From Styela clava (lineage: Eukaryota), in contig NC_135253.1 of the NCBI RefSeq assembly GCF_964204865.1, forward strand, positions 14,508,001 to 14,572,000: a stretch of DNA of 64,000 bases, read 5' to 3'. The number at the start of each line of letters is the position of its first letter. The stretch's first letter is position 1. A program made the translations under genes and the position numbers. Below are positions 6,139 through 44,904 of the stretch, piece after piece. Under the pieces are notes generated by a model, which saw only the letters and a program-made list of their open reading frames with translations, made no database searches and had not been told where the DNA came from.

Positions 6139-6235
6139 TTCATTGTTAGTTGTATTACTTATTTGTGATGATTCTCACTTTTTCTTTTTGAATTGTAAGA
6201 TGTATTCTCTTCGTTCCTACATCTGGGGCGGGGAA

Positions 6236-7288: not shown

Positions 7289-7518
7289 GACGGTCACCGT
7301 AATTTGGATACAGTGACACAATGGAATAACTCAAAACCACTCATGGCATAATGGTAGCGAGAACGTATGATATATTTAAAAAACGGTTTAAGCAGTCTTT
7401 GAATTATGCTTATTTATTGTGGCCTAACTCCTAATGGCATTACATTTTAGCAGGCAATTGGTACACATATGGATCATTCAATTGAACGGATGAGCAATAA
7501 GTACAATGTTTAGACTAC

Positions 7519-8050
7519 CTGAAAAAGCATTGCATAAGGCATCCATCTCATCACATTTATTGCTTCATTTGGTTGTTTCAGAAGTTTTCCATCGTTTACA
7601 TTAAAATCGTTTTTGCACAACTTCAGGATGTTATTATCATGAACATATTTTATCACTGGTGATTCCCAGCAATAAGTTTCACAATATTTGATGAAATCTG
7701 AGGAATATCCAGTTTCGTTTTTCACTGGATGACACGTGATATTTCCGACTGTTAAATTGTATATATATATATATAAATTATAAGGCGATAGTATCGAAAT
7801 ATTCCAGATTGGAAACAAAATACAACTTTTTAAACGCTCAAAACAGTTTCATATTTTAAGTAGAATTGTAACTCTATAATTTTTACTCACCGATCAGTTC
7901 AGTCAATTTGACAGCGATTGCTAGAATAATAACCAGGCGAACACCAATAAACTGCAATATGCGATCCGGTCCAAGTTCTATTACTGTCTCACTTTCATGC
8001 AGTTGAAACGCTTCATCTAAAGCTGTCAAAATCGTATTTTGACCTGACAT
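7519..8050 (-). pseudogene. Pannexin/innexin-like gene A, exons 1-2 only (close paralog of gene B); truncated or interrupted
   Basis: Exon 1 8050-7891 (MSGQNTILTALDEAFQLHESETVIELGPDRILQFIGVRLVIILAIAVKLTELI, GTGAGT donor). Exon 2 7748-7519 (VGNITCHPVKNETGYSSDFIKYCETYCWES...WMPYAMLFQ). Both exons are open with intact splice sites. I found no exon 3-6 homologue in 1-7500, and the LTR lies ~200 bp into intron 2. Confidence 0.75.
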
Positions 8051-8717
8051 CCTAACACTGCCTTGAAAATTGCGTACCAAAGAATGGGCTTACCAGCTTT
8101 AATAAAATGTTCTTTCAGTCTGACTTAAACAATGGCAGTCAGGGCTTATCGTTTCCTGCAACGGTCTGTGATTTTGAATGCCTCGATTTACTCATAGTTT
8201 CTTAACGGTGAATATGGTAAATATAATACAAAATTTCAACTTAATTTTTCGTTTTTGTCTATTATTAAGTTGATAGCGCGTAGGGTAAATCAGTAAACGC
8301 ATATTTGTCCGTATGTTTTTAATTTACTTTCGTGATTTAAGCAAGGACGTAAAATTGCGATTTAAGTGATGCGTCGACACTTTAAATAAAACTACAGCAT
8401 AAATGTGAGTAAAATCGTGCGACTCTGAGGATTCCCAGCAGTGAACGTTTGCATACTTTATAAACGGTTTTTAACTTTGTGAGTATTTGTCACAGGACAA
8501 CATGACATTTGCACCCCATAAACACTGATTTCAACGTCAAGTATCAATATACTCTGGTATATTCGTTTTTTCGCATATTTTGTCGGCATATACACAAGCG
8601 TGGCATGTTTATAAAACTGCACAAGAAATTTCTCTTCGAAGGTTTGAATTTTGTTGGTGTGTTCCAGTAAACGTTATTGGACCTTGTGCCTTTAGTTTTG
8701 TGAATATTCAGATTTAC

Positions 8718-8872
8718 CGGCCACTTCTGACATTTTCAACAACAGTCAGCAATTCCAAAAAAGAAACTTCCAAAAAAGGTAGAAATTGCTCAGATGGAAC
8801 CTCCATAACCATTTTCTCATCGTGCGTTAGGGAAGCTTGTTCCAGTTCTTCGAATATTCCTGTTTGACTCGT
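8718..8872 (-). pseudogene. Degenerate exon-1 relic of a further pannexin-like paralog (gene C-like)
   Basis: Reads TSQTGIFEELEQASLTHDEKMVMEVPSEQFLPFLEVSFLELLTVV/KMSEVAG|GTAAAT, against gene C MSQAETLQGLDTASQKHEQELVIELSSDRILHFLGVSLPILLAVVTKITEITG|GT. The start is ACG in place of ATG. Length is 155 nt versus 157 nt, i.e. a 2-nt frameshifting deletion, and the phase-1 donor is retained. Confidence 0.78.
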
Positions 8873-11670
8873 GTTGTAGCATAGCTATTAATAAATAAAA
8901 ACCTTGGGCAGTGGTTCCCATCCTTTTTCGTTATATTCCTTCCTTCGCCTATTTTAGAACTCTTTATTCCCTTTCACTATGCAAAAAACTGCTTTATTTA
9001 TTTAATTTTTATCGTAATAGTAATTCATATCAATAATAGGAAATCAAAGACTATTAGTGACGCTACTGAAAATACAAAATGAAATTTTCAGAGGGGGATT
9101 TCGTCTTCATTGGGAAACATGGCTATAAATTTTTTGAACCAATGATCAAATACTATTGCTTATGCGCGTATACCACTCTTCCCACTATATATATCTGCTA
9201 GTCTCTCTGCTCATCATGATTCATGACATGCTCGTTTTCTGAAATAGAAATTCAGAAACGTGGGAAAACTGTAAATATTGTTCATGAGATATAACTTTTC
9301 ACGTCACACTTATGTGGCCCGCTAGTCTTGGTGGACAATATTTATGACCCCTGGTCAAAAAACCTTGCCCAACCCTGCTCTAGATGACAGTTAAATATTA
9401 TATTTACTTGCAGTCATCAATCCTGGTAAAACTTGCCACTGATGTTTTGTTATAAGCAATAAATACAAAGCAATTGATAGGAAGACAGCAATTAAATTGC
9501 AAAGCATTTCATTACTTTGAAAATAAATTGGCAACCATGAATATTAAAATCCGCTGTTATGAAATTGCTTCATGCATAGTCTACCATTAAAATTTTAGAT
9601 GGAGGCATTGGATTTATTTAAAATTGCAATAATTTTATGCTGTGTACTCAAGATGGAACTAATTCAATTAATGACGAAAAAGTCCTGTTTCTCTACTAAT
9701 AATCGTGAATGTCTCCGCTATGAACTCCAAAATAAAATTGAATGTTATACGTTAAAAATTAGTAAATATAGTACAAAATTTCTACTTAATCTTCGGTTAT
9801 TCGCTATTATTAAGTTAATAGCGCATATAGGGTAAATCAGTAAACGCATATTTGTCCGTATGTTTTCTATTTACTTTCATAATTCAAGCAATGATATAAA
9901 ATTGCAATATAAGCAATTAAAAACATGCAAACAAACTCTTGATTGATAGAGTGTACAAAGACGATTATTTAGTTTCAGTACACAAGGGCCCGTAATTGTC
10001 GTCAATCTTGTATGCAATCGTGTATGCAATTGTTTTAGGAAAGAATTTTGACTTAGGAGTTCAGGTAAAATACTGGCCTTGGGTACACTTTATATTCAGA
10101 TACGCTGTTGCTCTATCGGATGTTGTGGGAACATCGAAACTCCAGTGCTTTTTTTAATCTATTAAATCAAACAAATTGTGTATTCTCTGTGTGTATCGAA
10201 ACTTTAAAATGTAATGATCTAAATTATATATGCATTGTGCAAATATTATAATATCAGTTCGTTCATGGTACTATTTTAAAATTTATATTGGGGTGCCTTA
10301 TCATAAACTACTCAACACGAATATATCCTCATAATCGAAAAAATTTAAAATAGTTCTTATCGTGCATTTGAAGTTGCGAAAGATCTAAATGCTCGCGTTA
10401 TTCGTTTTTGTTGCGAAATAACGATCTATCAGCTTTTGTACTAGGCTCACCTTTACTATCATCGTATTTAAATTGAAAATTGAATGGCGGTGTCTCATAT
10501 AACGATATTCTTTCATTAAACATTGTATAAATTGTAACATTGGACGTCACCTCAATTAAAAGTACAGCATAAATATGAATACAACAAACTGTGCGTGTCT
10601 GAGGATTCCTAGTAGTAAACGTTTGCATATTTATAAATCTTTTTAACGTTGTGAGTAATTTTCACAGGACAACATGACGATTGCATCCCAAAAAAACATT
10701 GATTTCAACGTCAAGTACTATTTCTCTCTGGTATACTCGTTTTATTTTCATTTCGAACCCAACCTGCACCTGACCTCACGATTCCTTTACGGATTACGCC
10801 AACGACACTGATGGGTGCTGCGGTGATTGAAGTATTAATAACCTAATTAACAGGTTTTTATCAACGCAAACTTGGCTACATCTGACGAGGTCGATGAGAA
10901 ACAGACGTTTTCCGCTAGTATATAGTGTATGCTATGCATAACATGTTCAGATAAATTTCCCGTTTGCGTGTTTTGAAACCTTTCAATCCTTGCCAACTTT
11001 GCATGAAAACTCTGTTTCCATTATTTGTTCAATCCTATATTGATCCTTAGTGATACAAGCAACTCACACTATGGATTTTGTACAGTTTAATTATTTGGAG
11101 TATGTATCACAATAATTGCAAATAAGTGAACAAGATTTGTGAAACTACGCTAAATATTAAATGATATTTCCTCCCCAGGAACATGAAAATTCCTCAAAAT
11201 TTCTCCCCGGTCGGAAAACTATGGTCTAACCAAAGGAATAAAAAGTAAATCAACAATAACATATCTTGTACATGAAATTCAGGTATATATATTATATTTA
11301 TTTGCAGTCATCAATCCTGTATATATAACTTGCTAAAATTATATGAACAAACTATTACCTAGCGAGGGTAAAGCCATGTTATTTCAACACACAAATATAA
11401 ACTTGAATATTTACGCAATTAATAACAAGAAATGAATGTTTAGAGAATATAAATTACTGATATGATAACCATTACATCCCATAATCTATCATGAATGCGA
11501 GCAACATTAGAAACGATAGCGACTGAAGAAATGTCGAAATTCAAACAGAACGTTGAGCCGACAAATATATGATTCTTCAGACCATTCATATCCGATTTTA
11601 AAGTGTTCAAATATTGATATAATTACACGAGGTTTTGGTTTATAACATTATATCAAATTCTTGTCTTATT

Positions 11671-14600
11671 TTACTTTTTGTCTTGCATTTCACGCAGTGC
11701 TGCCATCATCGATATGCTTCCCAGATTTTGGATATGTTCCAAAAACACGCACGCTTGTCGATGACGACTCTTTGAAGTAGAATATAGGTGGCTCGAAGAA
11801 ATAATCAGATATATAACAATATTCATGAAATTGATAACAAGAAACGCCAACATTTCGGTCTTTCTGTGAAGGGTGCAGACAATGTATTCGTTTTCATAAT
11901 ATAAGACATTGCACCTGAAAATATTGAAATTTATTTCAAAATAGTGGTTGGCGAGACAGTTGTCGATAAAAAATATACATACATATTTGCAATACGTTTT
12001 TCACGTCTATTCCCTTTCATCAAGATTTTTCTCAAATAATGTGGATGATTAGGGATTTTTTTAACAAGACTTTATCGAAACAATTGTTTTAAATCAAGTT
12101 TTTTTTTACCTGTTTTGTTGAAATCAATGTCCTAATTGTTTCTATTGTATTGAATGTATTACAGCAAAAATACCGATGTAAAAACTCGACTTATTCTTAT
12201 CGTCAATATAGCTAGCTGACGAAATGCATCATCTTGCCGTAGTTTCACGGCGATGCGAATGGGAGACAAAACAATTTCTGACTCAATAGCCCTTGATTTA
12301 AAACGGGCTATTAATGATGATGTCCATAATGATTCAAATCCCATGTCAACCCGAATCTACTGATCATACAATTAGGTCACATAGTCAGCGTGTATAATGA
12401 ACCGGAGGTCGATTGCTACACTTCGTTTGTTACCATTTATCTTGGTTGTTCAGTGACTTTGCTTAGCTCAAGCTTGAATACAAAATGAAAAGAAAGAAGT
12501 TGAGCAGTAAAAAATAATAGAGGAAAGAGACTTACAGAAAGCTTTCTGATTCCCATATGTCAGATCCCAACATTTCAAAAACAAACGCTATTCCTCTAAT
12601 TATCGTTAGCGATATGATTATTGCAAATACGTGTTTCAAGTAGTATCTGATAACCAGAAATCGACTGCTGAAATTTTCTTTGTGACACCACTGGTGCAAT
12701 ATTGCATCTTCCATGGGATACACACCTCCCTGGTCTTCAAAGTGTTTTATAAAAGTCAGTTGGGATATAGACAGTAGGTATGGGTAACATTCCAAAGAAG
12801 AAAAATTCTCGTAACACAGCATTGAAAATAAGTGTCTGTCAAGCATTTTGGATTTATCACTCTGTGTAATTCCATGTGCCGTATTTCTTGATTTCGTTGT
12901 TTCATTTTTGGGATCTTCAAGATCATGGTCGTTCCGCTATATTAAAATAAGTGTTCATATAAACACGTGTGCTCTTTACATACCGAACGTAAAATAAATT
13001 CAAAACTGTAATAAGAACGATTCATATTAAGTGTGTATTAATTCATATCAACTATACATAGTGTTTTAACTTTTAACAACATCAATTAAACCATAACCCA
13101 CGTGAATTTCCATGTCTAGCGTTTGTCCTCTGACTTTCTCAAGGGCTTTATTGACTTCATTCCTTATACCCGGGGTATCATTGTTAACTACTTCGCCGTT
13201 TAGATGTGGTGAACGTTGTTTACAACCGCTAACATGTAAGCTACCATCGTAGTATTTACTCCTATAGATATATTATAATCTACGGTATATACTTTGCTAA
13301 ATAAATAGATTGAATATTGTTTATTTAACACAGAAGGGGCCAGGAATCATTTCATAATATTGTATTTGTTGTTGCAACCAAAATTTGGCATTCGCTGTTA
13401 CTGATGAACAAACTGCTTCAATTCTACAATCGTTTAAAGTTTTTTTCCCCAAAGGCTATCGCGTTCACTTGCTTTAAAATTTTCGAAATATTGCGCCACA
13501 AAATGGAGAGGTCGACTATGAATGTTCGGGTGACCGTACATTTGAACCCACGTACATTTGAACCCATGTGTATATCCACGGGTTCAATCTACATGCGGGT
13601 GCTAAAACCCATGGGTTAGGGTTAGTGTGGGTTCAACTATCCGAAAAACAAAAAAAATTCCATAGGTGCAATGGCATACAGGTGCAATTGCCATGGGTTC
13701 AAATGTACGTGGGTTCAAATGTAATGGAACCGAATGTTCGACCAAAAGAGCACGAAAGAAGCGTGTCAATTTCGTGTCTAATTATTTGAGCAGTTCTCTT
13801 TTATCTAGTAACAACTATTTGCAAGTGGTACAAATGACATTTTGCGATATATACCGATAAAAGAAAAAAAATAGGCCCAGTGTTATCTAATATCTACATA
13901 TATATATATATACAATACACATACAATTGAGCAACCCATGTTACATTCAAGTGAAAATAGTAGTGTCCCAGGCTAACCTTCGAGATCTATCATCCGAAGA
14001 GTTTTAATGTATTTAATGAAATTGTGAGTAGCTTTACAAAACTATGCAACTCACTCATCGTATATTCCTGCAGGAACATCTTTGACTTTCTCATAAATTT
14101 GTTTGATAAATAGTTTCATACATTTCAAATGCTCCATCAATGGTACCCGAACTCGCAGGTTCCACCACGCAGAAGGAAGAGATAGCAAAAACGCCTAAAA
14201 TAAATGTGAGCACAGAAGGCATTGTTATTGCACAAAACGCTAATATTGAGCAGTCAGAGCAAATGATCTGTTTTTGAACAATATCATAATCAATTTGCAT
14301 ATTCAAAATCATGTTTATTTATACTGACGTATGTGATAGAAACATTGTACTTTATCAAACCATTGGAGCACATATATACATGGTTCATTTTATTTGAGGG
14401 GTGACCCAACAATAATCATATAGTGTCCGAATAGACTACCTGAAAAATCATTACATAGGGCATCCATATCATCACATTTATTGCTTTTTTTGGTTGTTGC
14501 AGGAGCTTTCCACCGTTTGCCTCGTTAAATTCGACATTGCACAAGTTCTGGATGGTATTATCATCGACATCTTTTATCACTGGTGATTCCCAACAATAAG

Positions 14601-14908
14601 ATTCACAATACTCGATGAAATCTGAGGAATATTCAGTTTCGTTTTTGACCGGATGACAGCTGATACTTCCCACTGCAAAATTATATGCAAGGTATCGTCA
14701 TAACCAGTTATAGGCGATAGTATTGAAATGTAGCTTTAAAATACTCACCGACTAGTTCATTTAACTTGGCAGCGATTGCTAGAACAAGAACCAAACGAAC
14801 GCCGATGAACTGTAAAATGCGATCTGGTACAAGTTCTGTCACTACCTCACTTTCATACCGCTGTTGAAACACTTCCGCTAAAGCTGTCAAAATCGTATTT
14901 TCTGACAT
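11671..14908 (-). CDS. Pannexin/innexin-like channel B (6 exons, ~445 aa)
   Basis: Exons 14908-14749, 14672-14440, 14194-14055, 13261-13102, 12936-12536 and 11914-11671; all introns GT-AG, frame continuous over 1338 nt. Four TM segments with pannexin-type motifs EL..DRIL (pre-TM1), ISC...YCW (EL1), WMPY...LP..WW...LKCMK...IY (TM2), FLVIRYYLKH (TM3) and FLC...C (EL2). Confidence 0.85.
13529..13731. mobile_element. MULE-like MITE (9-bp TSD) in intron 3 of gene B
   Basis: Inverted ends GTACATTTGAACCCACGTACATTTGAACCCATG / CATGGGTTCAAATGTACGTGGGTTCAAATGTA; perfect 9-bp TSD GAATGTTCG. Other copies at 52007-52188 and 53613-53799. Confidence 0.85.
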
Positions 14909-16601
14909 CTTATTATTCCAATTACGCACTGAAGAATTCAAGCTAGGTATTGAATCTGTGCGCCAGCTTCATACAAGCAATTCAGGAATTTTTTTAATGT
15001 ATAGAATTGGGCCAAAATTGTGACATTTAACCTGAACGTATTCAAAAGAACACGTTACAACATCTATACCACAACTATGATTAAGCCAAACTTGAATGTC
15101 GCACAATTCAAGGCTATTATAACTAGACATATGAGAAGAAGGACCAATTTGTCGACCGAACAAAATAAACGTCGACGGTTGTAAAATCTCATTGATCAAA
15201 TCTAGTTTCCAGAATTGATTAAAAACGAGTAATCAACTGTGTTTCATTCTTCAAATTTGAACAGGTTAAGTTAAAGTATGTAGATATACATTCATGTGTT
15301 TAACCGATGCCGTATAAAATAGTAGTGGGAAATAGTGCTATGAAGCATATAGAAAAGAGCACAATAGCTATTCTGTTTTCAATATAAGCATACGTCAGAA
15401 AAAGAGCAAAAGATAGCGCTGAGAAATCTTTTGTTACTGCTCGTATGGTGAGAGTCAGAATATTGTTGAAAGTTTTGTATTCTGTGAATGAGTAATGGTT
15501 GGTTGTATGGAATGACAAACGGTAGATAAATCTTGTATGGCTTACTAAATTCGATTCAAATTTATTTATATATTACTCGATGTATCGTATTTTCATGCCT
15601 GACTAACTGGTTACCGGTCATTTGAACCAGAAGGGTTGTTTATTTCCCCCAAGTAATGTACAGACTAGATACAGCAATAGATGAATGATGTAGTTAGCGT
15701 CTCGAATTCGGAAAGTAATGGCGATGTTTCATTTAAGTCTAAAAATATATATATTAGGTCATGGAAGCGTCAACATTTTTGCAAACAGTTGAGGTAAATT
15801 CGTACGACCTTACTCGTTTATTTCGTAGATCCCGGCTGTAAACGTGAATATCCTTGCGAGTGAAAAATATTACAAACGTGGAGAATGCATGCTTCACTGC
15901 GATTCTTTAACGTCGCTTTTGAATAGAATAACATTCTATCAAACCCTATAGCGATTCGTTACCGCGTTCAATAACTTAGACGACCGAAACTTGGCGTGTT
16001 GACTTAGGTTAGAAGGCTGTGAGAAAGTCAATAGGGCTTGTTTGTCGAAACTTGGTTCTAGATTTATTAAATAACAAAGTATAAAAGGGAAGAAATTAAT
16101 GTCAGTGAACAGTGAGTTTTAATAATTGTGAGAATGAAGTTTAAATGTAACTGTTGAACTCTTATTGATATCATCAATAAAATGCGTTCATAAAATTTTA
16201 AGCTTGTCGTTTGGGATTTGCACGTTAACGATAGTTTATGTGTTATGCGAGCTAACTAGACTATATAATTGGACTGTGTAGAACAATGATTTTATACGAA
16301 CTCCCGTGTCATGAATATAATTTCTTGATTACATTTTCTAGCAGTAAATCATGTTTGAAATAAATAACAATTCAGAATAGTTTGTTTAATTTTCAGTGAA
16401 ATACACTGTATTCGTAATATACAATGCCGCAACGCTAATCTCAGACAAGAAAAGAATTACGAGCATAGTTTTTCCAGTATCAAATCTTATTACATCAGTC
16501 TCTTCTCTATAATTCTATTGAAAAAAAATAAAATGAAAGATGCAATAATATCAGTAAAATAACGTTTACTTTTACAGTGATATATACATAACAGCAATAG
16601 A

Positions 16602-21290: not shown

Positions 21291-21384
21291 TGAACACAGC
21301 TTTTACATAACTTATTATTATATTGATAAGCAATTTCATTTGTGTGAAACGCTTTATTGTGATTAAAAAACGATTAATATAAAC

Positions 21385-33060: not shown

Positions 33061-33420
33061 CAGGCTTGTCCATGAGACATATTTTTCTGTCCTATTCCCA
33101 TCCCATGGCAATTCTGCCTGTCCCACCCCATCGCATTCCCATCCCAGGCTTAGCGTCTACTAAAATAGGACTACATGTACGAATAGACATGCATAACAAC
33201 AAAATTTACGGACTTTTTATTTAACTTTATATTCATAAATATTATACGTGTGCTGAATATTTTTGAATATATTTTGCTCTTTATAACTAACAAGAGAGCT
33301 AGGCTCAAATATATGGACACGAGTTCCATAACGAAATGTTTTACCATCATTTCCCCGAAAATCATTCGTGTCCCATGGGAAATACAAATGTATGCTGACC
33401 CATCCCATTGGACAAGCCTG
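33061..33420. mobile_element. hAT-type MITE, TIR CAGGCTTGTCCA
   Basis: TIRs CAGGCTTGTCCA / TGGACAAGCCTG; perfect 8-bp TSD GTTATTTC; ATCCC subterminal repeats; second copy at 42390-42837. Confidence 0.9.
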
Positions 33421-36400
33421 GTTATTTCTGTATAATTCAGCGTTAAGTATGAGGCCCTATATACCACTCGTTTGCATTATTGGACACGTAGTGGACATAA
33501 CGATCGTTTCAATATTATGTTGTTCTTGTTGTTTGACACAGAATAACACACCTAGTGGAAATATTAAAAAACCGCTTTTCTCTTCGAATACTGGACCAAT
33601 TGCTTTGAAATTTTCAGTGGTTGAAGATAAAATTTTCCCCCAGAAGGCTATTACTTTTATTCATTTTAAATATTTCTGTTAAATAGCTCTGTGAGATTTG
33701 TTTTTGTTTGCTATGACATCATTAAACGTTCTGCGGACATCGGACGCCATTTTGTGTCCTACTGTACTGCATTGCTTGGTGTGAATATATTTGTAGACTG
33801 TGATCTGACGGTACGGTAAACCGTACTGTACTGCGAACAGACGTGTCCATATATTTGGGCGTAGCTCTCTTGTTAAATATCTAATGAACATCCACATCTT
33901 GAGATCTTTTTCACTTCGAGCATATTCGCATTCATTTCCACCTCTTTCCTTGTAGTGGACTTTTTGTTTTTGCAACATATTTTGTGTCAGTTTAATACAT
34001 ATATATACCAAATACATACCATGAAAATTCCAGATATACATATAAAATAAATGCTGGAAATTCAACTGTAACAGTTTGAGGTTTGTTACTTTGTTAACCA
34101 ATTTTGGAAATTCAACCAATCTCTATTTCAAATTTATCTGTTTAGATTGTTTGAATCTTTTATATCTAACTCGTTAATTTATCTACGTGGAAACGTAGTG
34201 ATTTCTTATTTCACGTAGGAAAATCAACTCCATGTTTTAGTCTGACTAAGTTGGCTTGTAGTAGATACTTGGGTCGAACAGTACGATCAGAAAAAGCTAC
34301 TCCAGGCGTAGCAAAGTAATACGAATAGATTAATAGTGGTTGGTATCTTTACTGTTTCTTGTCGGATGCGAACAATACCATTTGCAAAATAATTCTATAA
34401 TAGGATTTTGTGACTTTTTTTCTCGAGCGCAAGGATCTAACATTCAGATAAGAGTAAAACTCACACCCGGATAGAAAAATGTGATAAAATAGCATGGATA
34501 AATGCAGGACATACACAATTTTAGTTGTTGTCCATACTTTCCTTAACCGATAAGCTTTTCATATTTTGCATTATCTGTTTTAGATTTATTTTATAATTAG
34601 AATCTCAGTATATAGTATTGTTTGATGGCGCTTGAAAAATAAACTTTCTTTGCCATATATCGGTAGTTCGCTTCTAATCGTACTCCTTCAAGTGAGCATA
34701 TGTTTGCAACTCAACATTTCAATTATGAAGATATTTATTATTACAGCAGTAGATCGCAAGACTGTATGTTGCATCGTGGGATATCCGGCAAATTTCCATT
34801 CGTATCATATTACTTCCAAGCAATGGCGTCATTCGATTCATTGCATCCAAAATTGCATTATTGAGAACGCATTTATGACAGCATGTTCCGAAACATTACG
34901 TACCAATGTGTAATGTCAGTGCAGTAAATAGTGATTAATAAAAAAAATTCCTGAGGACTAGCAGTGTGGTCACATTCTTCTACGTATATACATATATATT
35001 ACATTTTATAGTATGTATATATGATTTATCTTACATATTATATTTTCTATACATCCATGTGGCGATGTTCGCGATAGTTCTATGTGTCCACTTTCGGCGC
35101 TGTTGTGCGATTAGTTAGCGTACCATTTGATGCTGGGAGCTATCATCTACATTCTACGTCACACAGGTATTTCTGCTTACTAAATAAGAGACAAAAAACT
35201 TTACAAGATAAAGAAAAAAGCTATTAAGTACCACCTGTAGTCCACTTCTTCTGTTGTTATTCGCTTACAAACTAACCTGCGAATGAAGTCCGCTTTTGTA
35301 GACGGCGCTCTGAGGGTTAGATGGGTAATCAGATGTTTTGCGCCGTTAGGATGCCGTTGTTGTTGCCTGGGAAATCTTATACAGCTTATATCAAGCCTAG
35401 TAAATGCTTTTGAAAGTCAATTTAAATCTTGATCAGTTTAACTCAATTAGAGTCGATTTATTTTGCGTCTTTCAAACATCGGCGAGAGAGTAAATCAATT
35501 ATGACGATATTTTTGGACCGGTAGTAAGGTTGAGGTTTTTGAAAGCTCCTATATGAGGTGATATTTTTGAAAGCGTCTATATGAGTTGATATTTTTCCTC
35601 TCAGATAATTTTTTTTGTGAAATCAAATGAGGGTGGATCGTGAGAACATAAAAAAATGAATATATTGTGCTCACATCTAAAATACATGTCCTAACTGAGA
35701 GAACGGGATACAGTAGACAGATGCCATTATTCGGACTGAATACTGTTTGAGGCTTGGATGCTGAAGCAGACAAAAATAACGTGACCTTTGCAACATCTTG
35801 GTGATGGATTAAAAATGAGAGCCATATGAAGAATTCTGACATTCTTTTTATTCCGCGGTACTAGTTCGGAATCGTTTTATGCAGTAGAAAATATGGAAAT
35901 AAAACCGCTATAAGCACCAGTGAAGGTCACCGACAAGACAGGAACTTTTTAAGCATAATGATTTCTGATACCTGAAGAGTCCGCTCAAAGGCGATTTACT
36001 GAATGCTGTGCCGAATTATATACTGTATTATATAAATCAACTATGTATTTTAACTGGGCGACTGTGTCTTCCACCTGCAACCAGGTACTCACAGCACTAT
36101 ATAGTGTTGTAAAAAACTACCAAAAATAATATTAAATTATGCGATTATTATTAATAATTGTGATATTCAGCTAGTGTAGACTCATATTATTGCATCACTG
36201 AACATGTGTTCATATTGCGTGAGCGTGATTTGACTTAAACTGTTCAGATTGATAATGAAATCAGAAAGACGCAGTGTAGACTAATAAAAACGGATGTAGA
36301 CGTCCGAGCTGTGAATATGCTATTGAGCTTGCTGCAGCGACAGAAATGTGGGCGATAAAAATCGAATCCTTGATGATCGTTTAACATTATTTGGTACTAG

Positions 36401-37049
36401 GGCCTACAAATTATACGAAGTGAATGCTAAAATAATTTTTGAAAGGAATTTAATAAAATGTTTGACCAAAGGCAGTATTATAGGTTCCATGCGAGTTTAT
36501 GAGTGTGGTATTTGTTACCAGGCGTAGATCAGTAATGCAGAGATACAAGAACATTTTCCGTACGCCGGTACGTGATAAATGAAAAAACTAAAGGGTATTC
36601 AATCTTGTTCGACATAATTCTTCTCAAAATAAACCTCCAATTTTCCCAAAATACACCTCCATTAATACCATCTATTTGATGTCTATTTTAGCAATACGCA
36701 TGTGCGTGCTCTCCTTAAATTATTCTACTCATACCTGCGATATTGCTGTCGTTTTTCAGATGAATTTTAAACAAAGTTAAAATAAATTCACATGTTAGTG
36801 GGAAGTACGTACACCCTTTCTGTGACCCTAAAATAGTCTTTATTTAGTCTGTAATTTGTTTGTTCATTTCAGTTTATTCATTGTTTGTTTGATTTTTTAA
36901 ATTGAGTTGTTAATCAACAGTTTTTGTCAAGTTTAAAAATATACTAAGATATATATTATAATTTAGATTATATTAAAATATTCTATTATCACAATCCGGA
37001 CTTGTTGAAAGGCCGTTGCCAGCCAACTCTAAATTACCACTTGGTGGAG

Positions 37050-38126
37050 ATGGAGTTCTACAGTAAGTATAAGTTTAACATAAGCAACCATCAACCTTCT
37101 ATAAAGTCCAATCATAAAGTTGCAAATTTTCAGATTATGTGTAAAACGGGACGTTGTTTTCTTAGTGATCTTTTCACCTTATCGACAATCTATCCAATTT
37201 GAGCTATCCATCAAGTTGAACAGATCTAGTCTTGTGCAACTACCACCAATATCTACATGATTTTTTCACTCATGAAAACAGATTAAGGAGATGGGAACCC
37301 ATGGAAATAACCTAAAAATATATCTTTTTATCTATAGTGGAAAACAAAAATTCTGTCCGAGTGAAGATGCCGGAAGACGAAGTAAAAGTTATAAAAATAT
37401 TAGGAAGAAACAATCTTCCCGATCGATTATTCGCACTGTACCTGATATGCCCGGAAAATGATGGGGATCAGTGGAATCAGCGTAAAACCAAAGGTAGGCT
37501 TGACTATACGATTGAATTCTTTTTTGCCGTTGCGAGATTGCCTTGTTATATTTCACGATTACAACAGTTTGAATTGTTTGCGATTTCGGTAGTAAAGCTC
37601 ATTCGATTATTGCATTTGTGCACTACCGTTATATTTTACGTTTGCCTCAGCTTATTGTGAAATTTGCATTGTTTTCTTGCTATAATGGTCTCACATATGG
37701 TCGGCAGTAGCAGTCTGAGGCGTTAAAGACAGCAAATCATATGTATATTGAAAGTATTTCACAAGTGTTTGTGATTTTTTGTTTTTACCACAAGCTATAA
37801 TGAGCTGTTATCTGTACTATAAAACAAAGAGTACGTTCTGATTGGGGTCAACTAGATTTGGACTTTCATTTATTTGTTTGTGCGTATCACTCCTGCCCAG
37901 TTTTCTGTGAATTTATTCAATTTTCCATTCTTTGGTTTCAGCTATCACTTCTAAAGACTGGGATCTTAATAAACTGACACCGGAAGAAAAAGAACAGCGA
38001 GCAAGTTACAGGGTACAATTCAAGTGTGGCGAGACTGAAGCTGATGCTACAAATGACAAAGTGAAAGGTTTCATTGTAGACACTGATCATGAGGATATGA
38101 TGTACTTCGTGATCTCGCGAAAATAA
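37050..38126 (+). CDS. Uncharacterised small protein X2 (3 exons, 117 aa), paralog of X1
   Basis: Exons 37050-37062 (ATGGAGTTCTACA|GTAAGT), 37338-37493 and 37942-38126; phase-1 GT-AG introns; 354 nt open. MEFYMENKNSVRVKMPEDEVKVIKILGRNNLPDRLFALYLICPENDGDQWNQRKTKAITSKDWDLNKLTPEEKEQRASYRVQFKCGETEADATNDKVKGFIVDTDHEDMMYFVISRK. Confidence 0.82.
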
Positions 38127-41100
38127 AGACCCTTGTTGATCAACCCATTATGCTTGTATTTCATATATAATTGTGTTAAAAACTTAGTCTTCACTTATAT
38201 CTGATTCAGACCAATGATATCGCCACTGTCCAGTAAGTGACCTTACATGGTGTCATACTGACTTCATGGCATCAAAACGTACAGTACTGCAAACTGTATT
38301 ATATTTTATTTGATTATGTTACTATTGATACTTTTTAATATTAATACGAAACCATGATGATTCTGTCTTTATAAATTGAAAAGTATTTGTATTGTTCACA
38401 ATTTAAATTTACTTCCCAATATTTCCACCATGCGTGTTCTATATTTACTGTCTTGCCTTTCACAAGACGGAACTTTCGGCGGTGTTTTTGTGAGAGCGAT
38501 TCGGCCTGACAATATTAGTACGGTCTTTTATCTTGTGTGCATTCAACCATGAAGTAGCTGATAGTTATCACAATACAATTTCGTTTTAAAGTCGTGTGAA
38601 TGTATTTGCGTTTTGAATTTGGGTAATATTATCGATAGAGAGATGTATGTGCGCAGCTTTCGTTTTGATCTTGAACTTTTTGAGATGTTTGCTGACAGTG
38701 CTTATTCTAGGCTGCTGAAATTATGTCACTATCTGCCTAAAATGTACCAGTTGTCAGGACAATTCCCCTGGGAACTCATTTGATAAATTGAAGTCGTGAA
38801 TTATGGATTGAGCGGGAACATGCGAAATGTATGCGTATCAGGAAGAAAGCGTTGTTGCCAAAGTTCCATTCGTCACTGAATCTGCCTTAATTCCTCTATT
38901 TCTAATGCAGGTGTATTGATATGACCAGTTATAGGGTAGTTATTCATTTTTACATTTGAATTTGGTCATAGAAGTTAATTAGTGCTAGCCATTTTATTAT
39001 TGAGTGAGTTTCCAAACATAGGATGTTGTTTAGACCTATGTATATAGCCAGTTTGAATAAATCACCCGTTTGAAATTCTACCTGAAGTGCATATGTATGT
39101 TACAATATTGTAAGTAGGATCTCCTATTGAAGTACGTACATTATTGCGTTTGCTCAAATCAAAGTCAGCGGGAACTCATCCTCATGCACACTGGAGTTTT
39201 AGGGATATTGTCATCGCGTTCTTTTTTATCGAGTATTTGTACCCGAATGTCAATCGTCAATGTTATTTATACTGAACCTACAAATGATGACTTTTCGGGG
39301 TCAAACAATGGTATTGCTAAATTTAGGCTTAAGAATGTTTCAATTTTTTTTATTCTCGATTATATTCCTACATACTCAACCTGCGGATACACAAATAGGA
39401 AACAGGCAAAATTTGAAGCGTCAATTATTTTCACCTATAAAACTGAAAGTTTTCTCTCGTAATTATGTCTCAATTTATGAAACCTAGATAAATGAGAACC
39501 AGCATAAATTATGTTGAGTTATATTTGGAGGGTGACTACTAACTAGTATAAAGCTTACTACACAGTGAAAATGACATTCATTCTTGGTAAATGCTACATA
39601 TGGGAGATAAACAATTTAAAATTAATATTGTCGCTAACGCAGGTACAAATGTGGCAATCAGGAAGTGAAAATACCGAATCACGACGTCAATATGGCGGAC
39701 ATCATTTATCTGGTCCAGGACATGCGTTTAAAAGCATTTCAAATGCAGATTTCAATTTATCATTTTGTTTGCATCTATATATATTCAGTCTAGACAACAC
39801 TATAAATTGCTGCGATGTTTATTGATTTTGAAAATCCCAACAGAAATACTGCAGTAGTATGGGCTGTTGTCTTTTTATGTAACAAGTAATTGAGTTTTGG
39901 TACGCTCCACTCATATTATATCGCATGTTTTTATTAGGTCTACTCTGGGAATGATATAAATGAATCTGGAACAAAAAAGAGTTTGGGTCAAGTGTGTGCC
40001 ACCGTTAAAATATAAACAACAGTAGTTACAGAATGCTGTAAAATTCAGTGTTACGTTTTCGATTATCAGTATTTGCCTTCAAGGCAAAATAAATTAAATG
40101 CGTTCTACACATAACACAGTCCATTTCTTTTTTAAACGTGTCATGTTGTAATGCCTCATCAACTCAACTGTAAAATTAGATTTATGTTATGTCAGCGTAA
40201 ACAATACAGCATTTTAGAATGCTGTGACGAGAAACCACAATTTTTATTGTTAGGCTGTAAAAAAGTATGTCGAGTAGATTTTGATAATGTGTAATCAGTT
40301 TCACTTGGCCCATGCGTCAATGCGTCATTTTATCAATGGCGCAGACCTAATATTGTTTGATTTGACCGATGTTATGAACTGTTTCGCTGAATAAGAACCT
40401 ATTTGTTATTAGATCAAACTTTGCCACAGGCATTTGCACAGAAGCAATGAACCGTGCGTGTGATGCAGCCAAGTCAATCAACCAAGACAAATACTTCACG
40501 ATAACCTTTTTAGACAACAACAGTTTGAAATCCCTATGCAGGGCCTAACGTATGAAAAATCCTATCAAAGAGTTACGTGGGTAATTTTTAATGTGTTCCA
40601 ATTCGTACGCCGTATAATGGTTTATGAGCCTTGTATCAATTTGCAACAGGAACATACATTATATTACAATTTGCTGCATTACTGAGTTCAAGCGAAATAA
40701 GCATTCACAATTTCACACACATTCTGTTGGGAATGAGCTATACATGAATGTGGCTATCAAGCCCTTTTCGAAACACTGTATATTCTAATTCTCATGCAAA
40801 CATTCCTCCATCATGTCGCTAACTTTTTTTCAAAGATTTACGTTACGTTGAGTGATATATATACGTTTGGTATTGTGCAAATTGATGGTGATGCGCGACC
40901 ATTGCATTAGCTCTGACTGATACGTGTTAAACTTTTTATGCCAAACTCTCCCGTTGACGGCTAACACGGAAATGTATGTTCCAGCAGAGGTGTGTGTTAA
41001 CGTGGTACGATCGTGATTGCTTTTATTTACTACTAGGAAATAGTAATGATGTGGCACTGGCTGGAAATACGCTAGTGGTATAATTAGGAGATAGGTCGAT

Positions 41101-41234
41101 ATAGATAGAACTATACTATGTCCATTCTTTAATAGCAACTTTATGATTATCAGATTAACTATTATTTATTGTAATCTACACGAATGGTGTGATATCAAAA
41201 ACTACCATCACCATTAACTGAGTTGTTGGGGACA

Positions 41235-44200
41235 ATGGCGAGCGCTTCTGAAGTTGCCCAAGGACTTGAAAATGCTTCTCAGAAACAAGAAAAAGAAATT
41301 GTAATCGAACTCGGATCAGATCGAATTTTGCATTACATCGGCGTTTATCTTGTACTATTTCTCGCTGTAGTATCTAAGTTATCAGAGGCCATTGGTAGGT
41401 GAATGTATGAACATTTTGAGTATGATATTTTAAAACGTTTCTAATAAACTCTGTATCTTTCAGCCATATTACTTGACCTATATTATACAGCTTTGCGCAG
41501 TTGTTTATTGTGGACTGTGTTGTCCCTTTGTTTCACAATGCCAGAACGAGTTCCCCTTACTTTTGTTTGAAGTAAACTATGCTTGATAAAACAATATTCA
41601 TTTCATTCTGAAAGGTCCCAATTTATCATGTTACCCTGCTGGGAATGTAACTGTGGAATCAGATTTCATTTCGTACGCAACATCATATTGTTGGGAATCA
41701 TCGAATGTGTCATTGTCAGAAACCAACAGCAACGGCAACAACAACGCTTGTAATGTGGATACAAACATTTCTTCAGAAAATCTTTTAAAACATCCATCAT
41801 ATCTAAAGACATTTCTCCAATGGATGCCTTATGGGATGATAATCGAAGTAGGTGTAGATTTCGCCGCTCTTGGAACTGTTAATTGTTAAAATGTTCCCTG
41901 TTTGGTTAGTTACCCCTTTCAATGCATAGAAATGAATAACTTTAAAAATATATCAGAAAAGAAGACTCAAATTTACGCGTAATGACTCACATAAACTGTT
42001 TTCTTTCAGAAAAAGAAACAGCTTTCGATGAAAAAAACATAAATATATGAAATCGGCTAACTACGTATACTTCAGAAATCTTACTGAAAAATATGCTCCA
42101 TTTTAATCTTTCTTAAATCATATAGTAGATAGAAATAAATCATAGGGAATAACTCACCCAATTGGATATTATGAAGATTCTATGCATTAAATAAATCATA
42201 AAACATATTCTAAATTGTGAAATTTTTCTCAGGCTTTTTTTTTTGCGTTGCCGTCTGTTTGGTGGCATTTCCGTGTCGGTGCTAGATTGATGGGACATTT
42301 GAAATTCATGAAAATATTGATAGACGATGTCTATGAAGTTGTGAAGACAAAAAAACGAGGAACATATCGCAAGTAAGTAATATTATTTACAGGCTTGTCC
42401 ATGGGACAAATTTTTCTGTCCAATTCCAATCCCTTAGCAATTATGCCTGTTCTATCCCATCTCATGAGATTCCCATTGGAAGAAAATTCAATAAAAAATT
42501 TTAAATCCAGGTTTAGCGTCTACTAAGTAAGGCTACATGTACGAAGGGACATGCAAAACAACAAAGTTTACGGTCTTTGTTAACTTTATATTCATAACTA
42601 TCATACATGTGCCCATCAGCCCCTTCACGAAGTATATTGTTAATGCTGAATATGTTTTGCTCTTTATGACTAACAAGAGATCTATGCTCAAATATATGGA
42701 CACGAAGTCCATCACGAAATGTTTTACCATCATTTCCCCAAAAATCATACGGTTTTCGTGTCCCACGTATGCCATGGGATATACAAATGTGTGCTGTCCC
42801 ATCCCATCCCATGAGACGTTTCCCATGGACAAGCTTGATTATTTAAAATTATGCAGGTTTATAATAATTACTTCATAAAGATACACTCGCATTATTGTGT
42901 TCTTGAGGCTCTATCAAAATGTTTGATAATAAAATACAGTATTTCGTGGCTCATTTCTAATTAGACTGCACAGAAATCTATCAATTATTACTTTGTTTGC
43001 AGTGCAATACTCGCAAGTTTTTTTTTCACAAACTCCTTCGTGGCTTTTCTTCGCCAATGACACAAAATTTTTCTCATAAATCCACCCAACAAATATCACA
43101 CTTTTACTATTTGTCATGGCATTCTCTTTAGAGGTTCAACCTATGACAGTCGGAGCTATTATTTGGATGGATGGAGCAGCTATGATCCACAATACAAACG
43201 ACAAGGATTAGACTCAGATACTGAATCTGAATCATCGGATCCAGAAGATTCGAATCCTTCTCCAAACACTGCAACAGGAATCAGACAAAGGAATGGAAGA
43301 AATGTCAATTCTGACAGTGCAGAAGACGCACCGCTCGATTCATCAAAAAAAGCTGCTGGTCAGTTAGAAGAAGTCTCAAGTCATGCTAATCCCTCAGCTT
43401 CAAGGATACAGCAACGCAAAAATACACAGAAGGTCAAAACGAAGAAGGTAGAAGTATGCGGGTTTCAAATAGAACTATAATAATTTTTAGGTGCTATAAT
43501 CTTTTTGATTCATTCCTTATTTATTGAAAATCAAACTTCAGCATTATCACTGTACTGAAACTAGTAATTGATATATCATAACAATTTTAATTTCTCAGAA
43601 AAGCATGGAGGACAGCTGGTACGTTCGATTATTTTTCGGTAACATGCGCGATAGAAATTTATTTTCTATGCTTTGCTTCGAAAATTTTGCTTCACTCGAG
43701 CAATATCCTTACATCTTGTCCGTGTACAAAGTCACCGATATTGAAGAAGACAAAAAGGATAAAGATTTGATAGGACCGAAGACTCAGTGTATCCTGCGAC
43801 TTGTGTCAAATCAAAAGAACATGAGTGGTCGTTTCCTAATAAAAGCATATCTTCTCAAACATGTTTTTGGCTTCCTTGTTTCCTTATCTGTACTGGCTGT
43901 GACTGCGTGGGTTCTCGTGACAATTGGATCTGATGGATGGACTTCTGAAAGCTTCCAGTGAGTATAGAATGTAATTATTGTAGTTTAGTAGTGATTTAGG
44001 AAGCTTTACTGCCAGTACCCGTAGGATCCAAAGTAGCAATTGCTACTCAGCCATCTATTTACATTTCAGGCCGTTTTGTACTTTGTTACTTTATACGCGA
44101 TATCCAATTTGGTTGTTTAGTTGCCAATCGTTTCGATCAATCTCATACAGTGGATGAATCCTAACTTTATGTGGAAAAGTAGTGAATAAATTACTTTGAC

Positions 44201-44904
44201 CTTGGGGTACCGATCCCCATAGTTGGAAGCTTGTGGAGGTGTTGAAAAGTTTCACAGAGGGCGAAAAAATATAATAGCAAATCCTTGTCTCGGTGTCGAC
44301 TCCTAAAATTACATCCCGGTAACAACTCACAGTTCCGACAGAAACACGTATAAGTGAAATTGGTAAAGGCAACGGAAATGAAACTTGGTGCGCACTTTTC
44401 CGTGCAAATATATATTGCCATTAAAAACGAAATTCACTTGAATATAATACTATACAAAACTGTACCCTACAAAGGTTGCTAACCCCTAAAAGTACTCAAT
44501 TGCTAGAAAGCATTTTACCTTATACGGCCCATCGGGCGTCTATGCCTTCCAACCAATGGCCGATATAGTGACGTTAATTATAGCTTATTTTATATTTTGG
44601 CGTTTTTGTTGTTAAAAGTTGTTTAAATCGTAAATATGATATCTAATATTATTTTTGTTTTAGGTGTGACATCGCCTATCACGAAGACAAATGCATGATT
44701 TGTACTCTGCATCGGAAGAGAGACATGATCGCATTTCTCGTGGTTAACCTGTTAGTGAACTTCGCATATTTACTTCTCTCTGTTTCCCAATGGATATTCA
44801 TCCGAAGAAGTGAGAATCGCGCAACTTGTTATTACCTGGAAGACATACGAGATCTCGGCAGTGTTGCGTTGCACCAAAAGAAATGGAAAAAGGGAGGAAA
44901 CTGA
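41235..44904 (+). CDS. Pannexin/innexin-like channel E (6 exons, ~482-484 aa), closest paralog of D
   Basis: Exons 41235-41394, 41615-41847, 42233-42372, 43132-43453 (alternative donor 43447), 43599-43957 and 44664-44904; GT-AG, frame continuous. Motifs IELGSDRILHYIGVY, NLSCYP...YCWES, WMPYGMIIEAFFFALPSVWWHFRVGARLMGHLKFMK and FQCDIAYHEDKCMIC. Confidence 0.9.
42390..42837. mobile_element. hAT-type MITE (same family as 33061) 17 nt into intron 3 of gene E
   Basis: TIRs CAGGCTTGTCCATGGGA / TCCCATGGACAAGCTTG; perfect 8-bp TSD ATTATTTA. Confidence 0.9.

What the first reader, a model, noticed from the sequence alone, without database searches (positions are those of the whole stretch)
7519..44904. 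Hidden cluster of at least six pannexin/innexin-like channel loci undergoing birth and death
Seen in sequence: four intact six-exon genes (B, C, D, E), one truncated copy (A) and one exon-1 relic within 37 kb, in mixed orientations. They share intron positions, including a 140-nt exon 3 in all four intact genes. Established: mammals have three unlinked pannexins (PANX1-3). The motifs EL..DR, SC...YCW, PY...LP..W...LKF...Y and L...Y match that family rather than connexins. From memory, vertebrate PANX genes also have a phase-1 intron just after TM1, as here; this needs checking. Inference: a lineage-specific tandem expansion of divergent large-pore channels in a probable invertebrate chordate, where I recall few innexin/pannexin genes being reported. 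It could be an undescribed channel subfamily able to form heteromers.
Basis: partly seen in the sequence, partly recalled or inferred. Interest (0 to 1): 0.85.

Follow-up and report, generated by a model that had tools for sequence, protein, structure and literature searches.

The report
Sea-squirt pannexin channel gene cluster
The window holds four intact genes, one truncated gene and one decayed remnant of the pannexin/innexin large-pore channel family in the sea squirt Styela clava. They belong to a roughly 160-kb array, far larger than the one to three such genes that the literature credits to tunicates, but the family is known and every gene is already a RefSeq model.

Summary
Four six-exon genes lie at the stated coordinates: B (445 aa), C (684 aa), D (470 aa) and E (482 aa). 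Beside them are a two-exon truncated copy (A) and a decayed remnant of exons 1 and 2. All share GT-AG introns in phases 1, 0, 2, 0 (1 in C), 2 and a 140-nt exon 3.

My spliced models are identical to current Styela clava RefSeq proteins, all named "uncharacterized protein". Transcript contigs from two studies confirm all five introns of B.

Family membership is met:
- Pfam Innexin scores above its cut-off.
- A family profile hits solved pannexin-1, -3 and -2 (E 1e-9 to 5e-4).
- The AlphaFold model of B matches pannexin and LRRC8 pore structures.

Counting an unlinked chromosome-9 gene, the assembly holds about 11 intact-looking genes plus broken copies. On chromosome 4 the array spans about 160 kb and includes a near-copy of the window's block (93-98% nt identity) about 110 kb upstream.

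A tree puts all Styela copies in one clade, apart from Ciona and Clavelina, so the expansion is lineage-specific.

The cluster is not "hidden". The genes are annotated, and two loci are listed as tunicate innexins in Welzel & Schuster 2022. This scan already reported the adjacent upstream block (s1-817493).

The recent duplicates may partly be uncollapsed haplotypes. Channel function and heteromer formation remain inferred.

The parts
7519..8050 (-). Copy A: truncated pannexin gene with exon 1 (8050-7891) and exon 2 (7748-7519) only. It encodes the N-terminus, TM1, extracellular loop 1 and half of TM2 (130 aa).
   Evidence: It is 97-100% nt identical to exons 1-2 of the full-length upstream gene A' (LOC120327270). 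Homology with the upstream block stops at about window 7290, inside intron 2, so the copy was cut by a duplication breakpoint. RefSeq models it as a 138-aa protein, XP_077967934.1.
8270..8869 (-). Relic R: decayed exon-1-like stretch (8869-8729) and exon-2-like debris (8524-8270, holding FIKYANVHCWESS) with stops and a frame change.
   Evidence: tblastn (E 1e-7 against C exon 1; 5e-5 against A exon 2). The same relic lies in the upstream block (window 8369-9732 matches C4:14406489-14407890).
11671..14908 (-). Gene B, 445 aa, six exons: 14908-14749, 14672-14440, 14194-14055, 13261-13102, 12936-12536, 11914-11671.
   Evidence: Model. Identical to XP_039248073.2 (LOC120325950). Pfam Innexin 28.8 bits against a cut-off of 25. 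All five introns are confirmed by transcript-like contigs in runs X1 and X4 and are absent from DNA run X9. AlphaFold model pLDDT 80.6.
13519..13731 (.). High-copy repeat of about 213 bp inserted in intron 3 of B; polymorphic.
   Evidence: contigs of DNA run X9 and of X1 skip 13518 to 13732, and depth there is more than 1000-fold above the flanks. Related copies lie at about 51990-52151 and 53613-53789.
16602..21290 (+). Gene C, 684 aa, six exons: 16602-16758, 17614-17873, 18229-18368, 18650-19548, 19981-20341, 21053-21290. Exon 4 is a 300-aa low-complexity Ser/Asp/Lys-rich cytoplasmic-loop insert.
   Evidence: Model. Identical to XP_039248781.2 (LOC120326525). Its earlier version XP_039248781.1 (96% identical) scores 38.4 bits on Pfam Innexin.
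22539..25975 (-). Gene D, 470 aa, six exons: 25975-25816, 25487-25249, 24696-24557, 24246-23958, 23571-23210, 22761-22539.
   Evidence: Model. Identical to XP_039248782.2 (LOC120326526). Precomputed PF00876 is recorded for XP_039248782.1, the earlier version of the LOC120326526 protein.
41235..44904 (+). Gene E, 482 aa, six exons: 41235-41394, 41615-41847, 42233-42372, 43132-43447, 43599-43957, 44664-44904.
   Evidence: Model. Identical to XP_039248432.2 (LOC120326240). Exon 2 alone gives Pfam Innexin E 0.059 at the correct profile positions. Two further full copies and four 5'-truncated tandem copies lie upstream.
6233..47774 (.). Extent of the recently duplicated macro-unit that carries A to E. 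It matches C4:14404748-14445370 and 14451847-14489720 at 93-98% nt identity.
   Evidence: blastn.

Best explanation
The region is part of a lineage-specific tandem array of pannexin (chordate innexin-family) genes on chromosome 4 of the ascidian Styela clava.

Each intact gene (B, C, D, E) encodes a four-pass membrane subunit with:
- an N-terminal helix;
- a disulfide-rich extracellular loop 1 carrying N-glycosylation sequons;
- a conserved TM2;
- a long, partly disordered cytoplasmic loop (exon 4) of very variable length;
- TM3, a cysteine-bearing beta-hairpin loop 2, TM4 and a short C-terminal helix.

By homology, the subunits most likely assemble into oligomeric, non-junctional large-pore plasma-membrane channels for ATP, small metabolites and ions, as vertebrate pannexins do.

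The array grew by repeated tandem and segmental duplication and loses copies by truncation at breakpoints, frameshift and repeat insertion.

Shown: gene structures, transcription and splicing of B, family membership, fold, clade structure, and duplication and decay.

Inferred: channel activity, oligomeric state, glycosylation, and any division of labour or heteromer formation between paralogues.
For: - Gene models are identical to RefSeq proteins of Styela clava.
- All B junctions appear in RNA-like contigs of two studies and not in DNA.
- Pfam PF00876 is above its cut-off for B, for C's earlier version and for most relatives. 18 of 34 family members match at E <= 0.01.
- A ten-sequence family profile hits Xenopus and human PANX1 (E 1e-9 to 2e-6), PANX3 (2e-5), PANX2 (5e-4) and INX-6 (0.05). 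No LRRC8 or connexin hit reaches E <= 1.
- The AlphaFold model of B has pLDDT 80.6 and pTM 0.77.
- Foldseek's top 47 ranks are all pannexins (E 3e-6).
- VIA-align gives Z 14-16 with 16-22% identity to pannexins, and Z 17 with 10-13% identity to LRRC8 pore domains.
- The ESM Atlas nearest clusters are chordate pannexins.
- Extracellular loop 1 has 3-4 Cys and at least one N-X-S/T sequon in every copy. Loop 2 has 2-3 Cys.
- There are about 15 exon-5 copies on C4:14.393-14.552 Mb and one on C9.
- All Styela copies form one clade with 99/98 support.
- dN/dS is 0.15-0.33 between recent intact duplicates and 0.32 for B against A'. Older pairs are saturated at silent sites yet keep open frames.
Against: - No functional data exist for any tunicate pannexin.
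- The Pfam match covers only the N-terminal third (TM1 to TM2).
- The homodimer prediction gave no verdict.
- In the profile alignment, the residues aligned with Xenopus PANX1's S-W-R constriction motif (Trp74/Arg75 in human numbering) are not W-R. B and E carry S-D at the matching exon-2 positions.
- The C-terminal tail is only 22-29 aa, so PANX1-style gating need not apply.
- Expression was shown only for B.
- The copy number in the assembly may be inflated by uncollapsed haplotypes.
Confidence: 0.85

Rival explanations
1. Much of the apparent copy number is an assembly artefact. On this reading the window's block (A to E) and the block about 110 kb upstream (A' to E') are two haplotypes of one locus placed in tandem, so the real array is about half as large.
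For: - The two blocks are collinear at 93-98% nt identity, including introns and spacers.
- RefSeq proteins from an older assembly of another individual differ from the window's C and D by about 3.5%. That is as much as C differs from C'.
- The older protein version of LOC120325950 (P0083) matches B', while the new version equals B.
Against: - E-type sequence occurs at least three times in full, plus four 4820-bp units. Two haplotypes cannot give that.
- The blocks differ in structure. A' is full-length but A is truncated. B' has a frameshift. D' is interrupted just upstream of exon 2 by about 2.2 kb of inserted sequence, partly repeat-like. D exon 1 is amplified fivefold upstream only.
- Exons are more alike than introns, and dN/dS is 0.15-0.33.
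- Even if this rival is true, the distinct lineages F, A/B, C, D, E and the chromosome-9 gene remain.
Confidence: 0.3
2. The proteins act as junctional innexins, docking head-to-head to form gap junctions. That would restore innexin-type electrical coupling in a chordate.
For: They belong to the innexin family. Paralogue diversity is the hallmark of junction-forming innexins in protostomes (PMC8769644).
Against: Every copy carries at least one N-glycosylation sequon in extracellular loop 1. PMC8769644 argues that this feature prevents docking in chordate innexins. Sequence and profile matches are best to the non-junctional vertebrate pannexins, not to INX-6. Tunicates have connexins for gap junctions (PMC6391747).
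Confidence: 0.08
3. They are LRRC8-type (volume-regulated anion channel) pore subunits that lack the leucine-rich repeat domain.
For: The highest structural Z-scores are to LRRC8A/C/D pore domains (Z 17). One relative (the chromosome-9 protein) gives a weak Pfam Pannexin_like hit (E 0.003).
Against: Sequence identity to LRRC8 is only 10-13%, against 16-22% to pannexins, in the same structural alignments. No LRRC8 chain reaches E <= 1 in the profile search, while 31 pannexin sequences do. There is no LRR domain, and PF12534 is below its cut-off. Z differences of 1-2 count as near-ties by the tool's own note.
Confidence: 0.04
4. The four 'intact' window genes are recently dead or dying duplicates without function.
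For: They sit in an array with obvious decay: A, the relic, B' and the truncated units. D against D' shows dN/dS of about 1.3 on few changes.
Against: Open frames are kept although silent sites between lineages are saturated (pS about 0.8). dN/dS is 0.15-0.33 for E/E'/E'' and C/C', and 0.32 for B/A'. B is transcribed and correctly spliced in two studies. Splice sites and exon sizes are conserved.
Confidence: 0.05

Closest known systems
Vertebrate pannexins PANX1, PANX2 and PANX3 (heptameric large-pore ATP-release channels)
   Same: - They give the best sequence-profile hits (E 1e-9 to 5e-4) and fill the top Foldseek ranks.
- The topology is the same: N-terminal helix, four TM helices, helix-plus-hairpin extracellular domain and helical cytoplasmic bundle.
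- They share the I/LSC...YCW loop-1 motif, the LP..W.F...LKF TM2 motif, and the TM3 region.
- Extracellular loop 1 carries N-glycosylation sequons.
   Different: - Loop 1 has 3-4 cysteines rather than 2, and loop 2 has 2-3.
- The residues aligned with Xenopus PANX1's S-W-R constriction motif are not W-R. B and E carry S-D at the matching exon-2 positions. An Asp at the second position recalls PANX2, judging from the title of PDB entry 8gtt.
- The C-terminal tail is 22-29 aa, with no long cleavable tail. The variable disordered segment sits in the cytoplasmic loop instead (53-300 aa, exon 4).
- A tunicate-wide invariant loop motif, DRHLFSMLCFENF, has no clear PANX counterpart.
- The genes are clustered and number 10 or more, whereas vertebrate pannexins number three and, from general knowledge, are not clustered.
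Tunicate 'innexins' already in databases and in Welzel & Schuster 2022 (eLife; PMC8769644)
   Same: They belong to the same family and clade. The paper's Styela clava entries XP_039249657/8 and XP_039249659 are genes A' and F of this same chromosome-4 array. Homologues in Ciona, Clavelina and Oikopleura are labelled 'Innexin' by UniProt.
   Different: The paper counts three Styela entries, which are two loci, and states that most tunicates have one innexin. The assembly holds about 11 intact-looking genes in at least six divergent lineages. The window's B, C, D and E are not in that dataset, and RefSeq names them only 'uncharacterized protein'.
LRRC8 (SWELL1/VRAC) pore domain
   Same: The fold is the same, and the structural Z-scores are slightly higher (17).
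   Different: There is no LRR domain. Identity is 10-13%. No significant sequence-profile hit was found. Pfam PF12534 is below its cut-off.
Protostome innexins (for example C. elegans INX-6)
   Same: They share the Pfam family PF00876 and exist as large, often clustered paralogue sets.
   Different: The similarity is only marginal (E 0.05). Innexins form gap junctions and generally lack loop glycosylation (PMC8769644). The Styela proteins all carry loop-1 sequons.

Membership tests
Innexin/pannexin family (Pfam PF00876) | Match to the Pfam Innexin HMM above the curated gathering score (25 bits) | tested here: met
   Gene B (P0001) scores 28.8 bits. XP_039248781.1 (P0002, the earlier version of gene C's protein, 96% identical to C) scores 38.4 bits. 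The F and chromosome-9 genes score 41.4 and 37.0 bits. Precomputed PF00876 is recorded for a D-like and an E-like RefSeq protein, 96% and 99% identical to D and E. The match covers profile positions 5-130 only (TM1 to TM2). Single exons by reference do not reach the cut-off.
Innexin/pannexin family (Pfam PF00876) | Significant sequence similarity to experimentally solved pannexins | tested here: met
   The profile of 10 tunicate family members hits PANX1 at E 1.3e-9, PANX3 at 1.9e-5, PANX2 at 5e-4 and INX-6 at 0.05.
Innexin/pannexin family (Pfam PF00876) | Four-TM fold with N-terminal helix and a helix/beta-hairpin extracellular domain, superposable on pannexin structures | tested here: met
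   The AlphaFold2 model of B has pLDDT 80.6. Foldseek gives E 3e-6 and probability 1.0 to PANX1. VIA-align gives Z 14.4-16.2 over 215-267 aligned residues. This is a predicted structure, not a solved one.
Innexin/pannexin family (Pfam PF00876) | Conserved cysteines in both extracellular loops | tested here: met
   Loop 1 has 3-4 Cys, with three positions invariant across ten family members. Loop 2 has 2-3 Cys. This exceeds the two per loop of vertebrate pannexins, as PMC8769644 notes for tunicates.
Innexin/pannexin family (Pfam PF00876) | Assembly into an oligomeric large-pore channel | not testable with these tools
   No functional or structural data exist. The one complex prediction gave no verdict and is not evidence either way.
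Chordate (non-junctional) pannexins | N-glycosylation sequon in an extracellular loop | tested here: met
   There is at least one N-X-S/T sequon in loop 1 of A, B, C, D and E. Actual glycosylation is untested.
PANX1 subtype | Trp74/Arg75 extracellular constriction and a long C-terminal autoinhibitory tail | tested here: not met
   In the profile alignment, Xenopus PANX1's S-W-R motif pairs with profile columns whose consensus is d-a-e, not W-R. B and E carry S-D at the matching exon-2 positions. The tail after TM4 is 22-29 aa. The genes are co-orthologues of PANX1-3 at best, not PANX1 orthologues.
Within Styela the phase-1 intron after codon 53 is universal.
LRRC8 family | Pannexin-like TM region (PF12534) followed by a C-terminal leucine-rich repeat domain | tested here: not met
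   PF12534 reaches only E 0.003 and 17 bits (cut-off 25), in one relative. No LRR domain is present. The proteins end 22-29 aa after TM4.
Connexins | Match to connexin profiles or structures | tested here: not met
   No connexin family appears in the Pfam scans. No connexin chain appears in the PDB profile search at E <= 1.

The most novel reading that the evidence does not exclude
Styela clava, and probably stolidobranch ascidians generally, secondarily rebuilt a diverse pannexin repertoire of six or more old lineages plus ongoing duplication. Co-expressed paralogues would form heteromeric large-pore channels with distinct pores and loop-based regulation. That would be a chordate counter-example to the 'innexin bottleneck' picture, in which early chordates kept a single glycosylated innexin.
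Probability: 0.3. Interest if true: 0.6.

Novelty: new member of a known kind. Interest (0 to 1): 0.42.

Why it matters
A current account of gap-junction evolution (PMC8769644) rests on chordates having lost innexin diversity, with lancelets, most tunicates and lampreys each holding one gene. That paper lists only two Styela loci.

An ascidian with about ten intact pannexin genes in several lineages at 30-40% identity shows that diversity could be regained in a chordate. All these genes keep loop-1 glycosylation sequons.

The array offers natural variants for testing what sets pannexin permeation and gating. The variants differ in pore-entrance residues, cysteine number and cytoplasmic-loop length, and they lack a C-terminal tail.

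It is also a clean example of gene birth and death by nested segmental duplication. The value is incremental. The family, its presence in tunicates and the gene models were already known, and the adjacent block was already reported by this scan.

Tried and rejected
- Single exons against Pfam and against PDB sequences gave only sub-threshold hits. These were Innexin at E 0.059 and PANX1 residues 117-152 at E 0.23, both positionally right but not significant. Ankyrin-repeat hits to exon 3 were low-complexity noise.
- A six-frame search of the whole genome with PF00876 found nothing useful (best E 0.28, elsewhere), because the genes match exon by exon.
- The joined spliced models were never sent to any search, fold or look-up tool. 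They have no reference, so that step was left out. Once exon 5 had retrieved database proteins, the RefSeq proteins proved identical to my models by local comparison, and I used those instead.
- The search for homologous proteins with the family profile returned only 5 proteins because of its word filter.
- The homodimer prediction for B gave no verdict (score 0.00, controls not run). It is not evidence for or against assembly.
Tandem arrangement in Ciona and Clavelina, and intron positions outside Styela, therefore could not be examined.
- A paper search for pannexin intron positions found nothing.
- The similarity between the loop motif DRHLFSMLCFENF and a C-terminal PANX1 stretch was rejected as unsupported. 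HMMER scored that domain at -3 bits.
- The depth of DNA run X9 over B (about 76) could not be turned into a copy number without a genome-wide baseline, and only one read-laying run was allowed.

Full report
**What is there**

The window is AT-rich animal DNA (GC about 35%). It lies at C4:14508001-14572000 of a 377-Mb assembly.

A translated self-comparison shows five sets of paralogous exon-sized open frames between 7.5 and 45 kb, on both strands. Choosing GT-AG sites that keep the frame gives these models:
- E (+), 482 aa
- D (-), 470 aa
- C (+), 684 aa
- B (-), 445 aa
- A (-), exons 1 and 2 only

The exon sizes are 160 (157 in C) / 230-260 / 140 / variable / 359-401 / 223-244 nt. The intron phases are 1, 0, 2, 0 (1 in C), 2. 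Exon 3 is exactly 140 nt in B to E.

Between A and B lies a decayed copy of exon 1 (8869-8729), plus exon-2 debris with stops.

**Are the models real genes?**

A profile of exon 5, built by reference, was searched against 1.84 billion representative proteins. It retrieved 66 proteins.

Local comparison shows that my spliced models are identical over their whole length to current RefSeq proteins of Styela clava:
- B = XP_039248073.2
- C = XP_039248781.2
- D = XP_039248782.2
- E = XP_039248432.2

Truncated A is contained in the 138-aa XP_077967934.1. This also fixes the organism. All these proteins are named "uncharacterized protein".

The joined models themselves were never sent to a search tool. 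The identical database proteins were used instead.

I laid public contigs on window 9000-15000. Transcript-like runs from two studies carry all five B junctions at exactly the modelled positions, including the exon 4 that I had placed with least confidence. A DNA run covers the introns continuously and shows none of these joints.

**What family?**

- Full-length proteins pass the Pfam Innexin cut-off. B scores 28.8 bits, C's earlier version 38.4 and F 41.4, and 18 of 34 relatives match at E <= 0.01.
- A ten-member family profile hits solved Xenopus and human pannexin-1 (E 1e-9 to 2e-6), pannexin-3 (2e-5), pannexin-2 (5e-4) and innexin-6 (0.05). No LRRC8 or connexin hit appears.
- The AlphaFold2 model of B (pLDDT 80.6) has an N-terminal helix, four long TM helices, a helix/hairpin extracellular domain and a helical cytoplasmic bundle.
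- Foldseek's top 47 ranks are all pannexins.
- VIA-align gives Z 14-16 to pannexins at 16-22% identity, and Z 17 to LRRC8 pore domains at 10-13% identity. This is the same superfamily fold, with sequence siding with the pannexins.
- The ESM Atlas agrees.

Every copy has 3-4 Cys and at least one N-X-S/T sequon in loop 1, and 2-3 Cys in loop 2.

Differences from PANX1:
- The constriction motif is not conserved. In the profile alignment, Xenopus PANX1's S-W-R pairs with columns that are not W-R, and B and E carry S-D there.
- The C-terminal tail is only 22-29 aa.
- The long disordered segment sits in the cytoplasmic loop instead (exon 4, 53-300 aa).
- A loop motif, DRHLFSMLCFENF, is invariant across tunicates.

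**How large is the array?**

Searching the whole genome with the exon-2 and exon-5 profiles, and mapping all exons on 184 kb of chromosome 4, gives this order:
1. F (-)
2. A' (-), full-length, the parent of truncated A
3. relics
4. B' (-), with a frameshift in exon 5 and stops from codon 258
5. C' (+)
6. D' (-), with about 2.2 kb of inserted sequence, partly repeat-like, interrupting the homology just upstream of exon 2
7. five tandem copies of D exon 1 with its upstream flank
8. E' (+)
9. E'' (+)
10. four 4820-bp tandem units, each running from mid-exon 2 of an E-type gene to 1.7 kb past its stop
11. the window's A, relic, B, C, D, E

One further gene lies on chromosome 9 (C9:13750768-13753240).

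Window 7290-47774 is collinear with upstream sequence at 93-98% nt identity. A's homology ends inside intron 2, so A was truncated by a duplication breakpoint.

The chromosome-9 gene and A' have the same six-exon plan (160/.../140/... nt; phases 1, 0, 2, 0, 2). F keeps the 140-nt exon but has seven exons.

**Evolution**

In an ML tree of 31 family members, all Styela copies plus one unidentified transcript form a clade with 99/98 support. Ciona and Clavelina sequences fall outside it. Within the clade, A'/B, C, D/E, F and the chromosome-9 gene are separate deep lineages. No vertebrate or protostome sequences were available for this tree.

Silent sites between lineages are saturated (pS about 0.8) while frames stay open. 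B against A' gives dN/dS 0.32. The recent pairs E/E'/E'' and C/C' give 0.15-0.33. D against D' gives about 1.3 on few changes.

The expansion is therefore old and still ongoing, with purifying selection on most intact copies and visible decay of others.

**Compared with what is known**

Pannexins in tunicates are established (PMC6391747). Welzel & Schuster 2022 (PMC8769644) state that most tunicates have one innexin. They list three Styela clava accessions, which are two isoforms of A' plus F, so two loci of this very array. UniProt labels the Ciona, Clavelina and Oikopleura homologues "Innexin".

No paper in the library describes the Styela array. This scan had already reported the adjacent upstream block with the same conclusion (s1-817493), and my independent analysis agrees with it.

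**Caveats**

- The 110-kb block duplication could partly be uncollapsed haplotypes. Inter-individual protein differences of about 3.5% are as large as the C/C' difference.
- Structural differences between the blocks, and more than two E-type copies, argue for at least some real duplication.
- The within-window count does not depend on this question.
- Channel activity, oligomeric state, glycosylation and heteromer formation are inferred by homology only. The one complex prediction gave no verdict.

**Verdict**

This is a real, correctly described pannexin gene cluster. The identification and the birth-and-death reading hold. "Hidden" and "undescribed subfamily" do not. Interest is moderate: the family's size contradicts a published generalisation, but the kind is known, annotated and already reported by this scan next door.

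Noticed in passing
window 4471-6138 (+): Two adjacent ORFs (337 and 206 aa) that read, by eye only, like the integrase region of a retroelement. They lie just left of the duplication junction at about 6233-7290.
   Followed up: no
window 13519-13731: A very high-copy element of about 213 bp inside intron 3 of gene B. A DNA run and an RNA-like run hold contigs that lack it, so the insertion is polymorphic. Related copies lie at about 51990-52151 and 53613-53789.
   Followed up: partly
G000:C4:14468622-14487050 (loci L009-L010): Four head-to-tail 4820-bp units, 99.3-99.7% alike. Each holds an E-type pannexin gene from mid-exon 2 to 1.7 kb past its stop, without exon 1. RefSeq-aa and 125-aa proteins on them. 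Whether they are expressed, for example by read-through or spliced-leader trans-splicing, is unknown.
   Followed up: partly
G000:C4:14428141-14433886 (loci L005): Five tandem copies of the first 29 codons of D-type exon 1 with about 1.1 kb of upstream flank (98-99% nt). This looks like an amplified promoter/first-exon module, and it is single-copy in the window (25906-27010).
   Followed up: partly
window 28273-28527 (-) and 37337-37660 (+): Two mutually similar small ORFs, unrelated to pannexins, lie between D and E. They belong to another finding of this scan (s1-813361) and are duplicated together with the pannexin block (window 29587-40995 matches C4:14451847-14462674).
   Followed up: no
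window 18650-19548 (+), exon 4 of gene C: A 300-aa Ser/Asn/Asp/Lys-rich low-complexity insert in the cytoplasmic loop. It is six times longer than in B and lies in an intron-phase context (phase 1 instead of 0) that differs from the other copies.
   Followed up: partly
window 880-1380 and 3650-4430: Tandem repeat arrays, with periods of roughly 110 bp and 35 bp, seen in the self-comparison.
   Followed up: no
another piece of the same genome (finding s1-815962): The scan's index lists an 'LRRC8/pannexin-type channel gene without LRRs, apparently fused to death-fold domains' elsewhere in this genome. My exon profiles did not pick it up as a member of this family.
   Followed up: no
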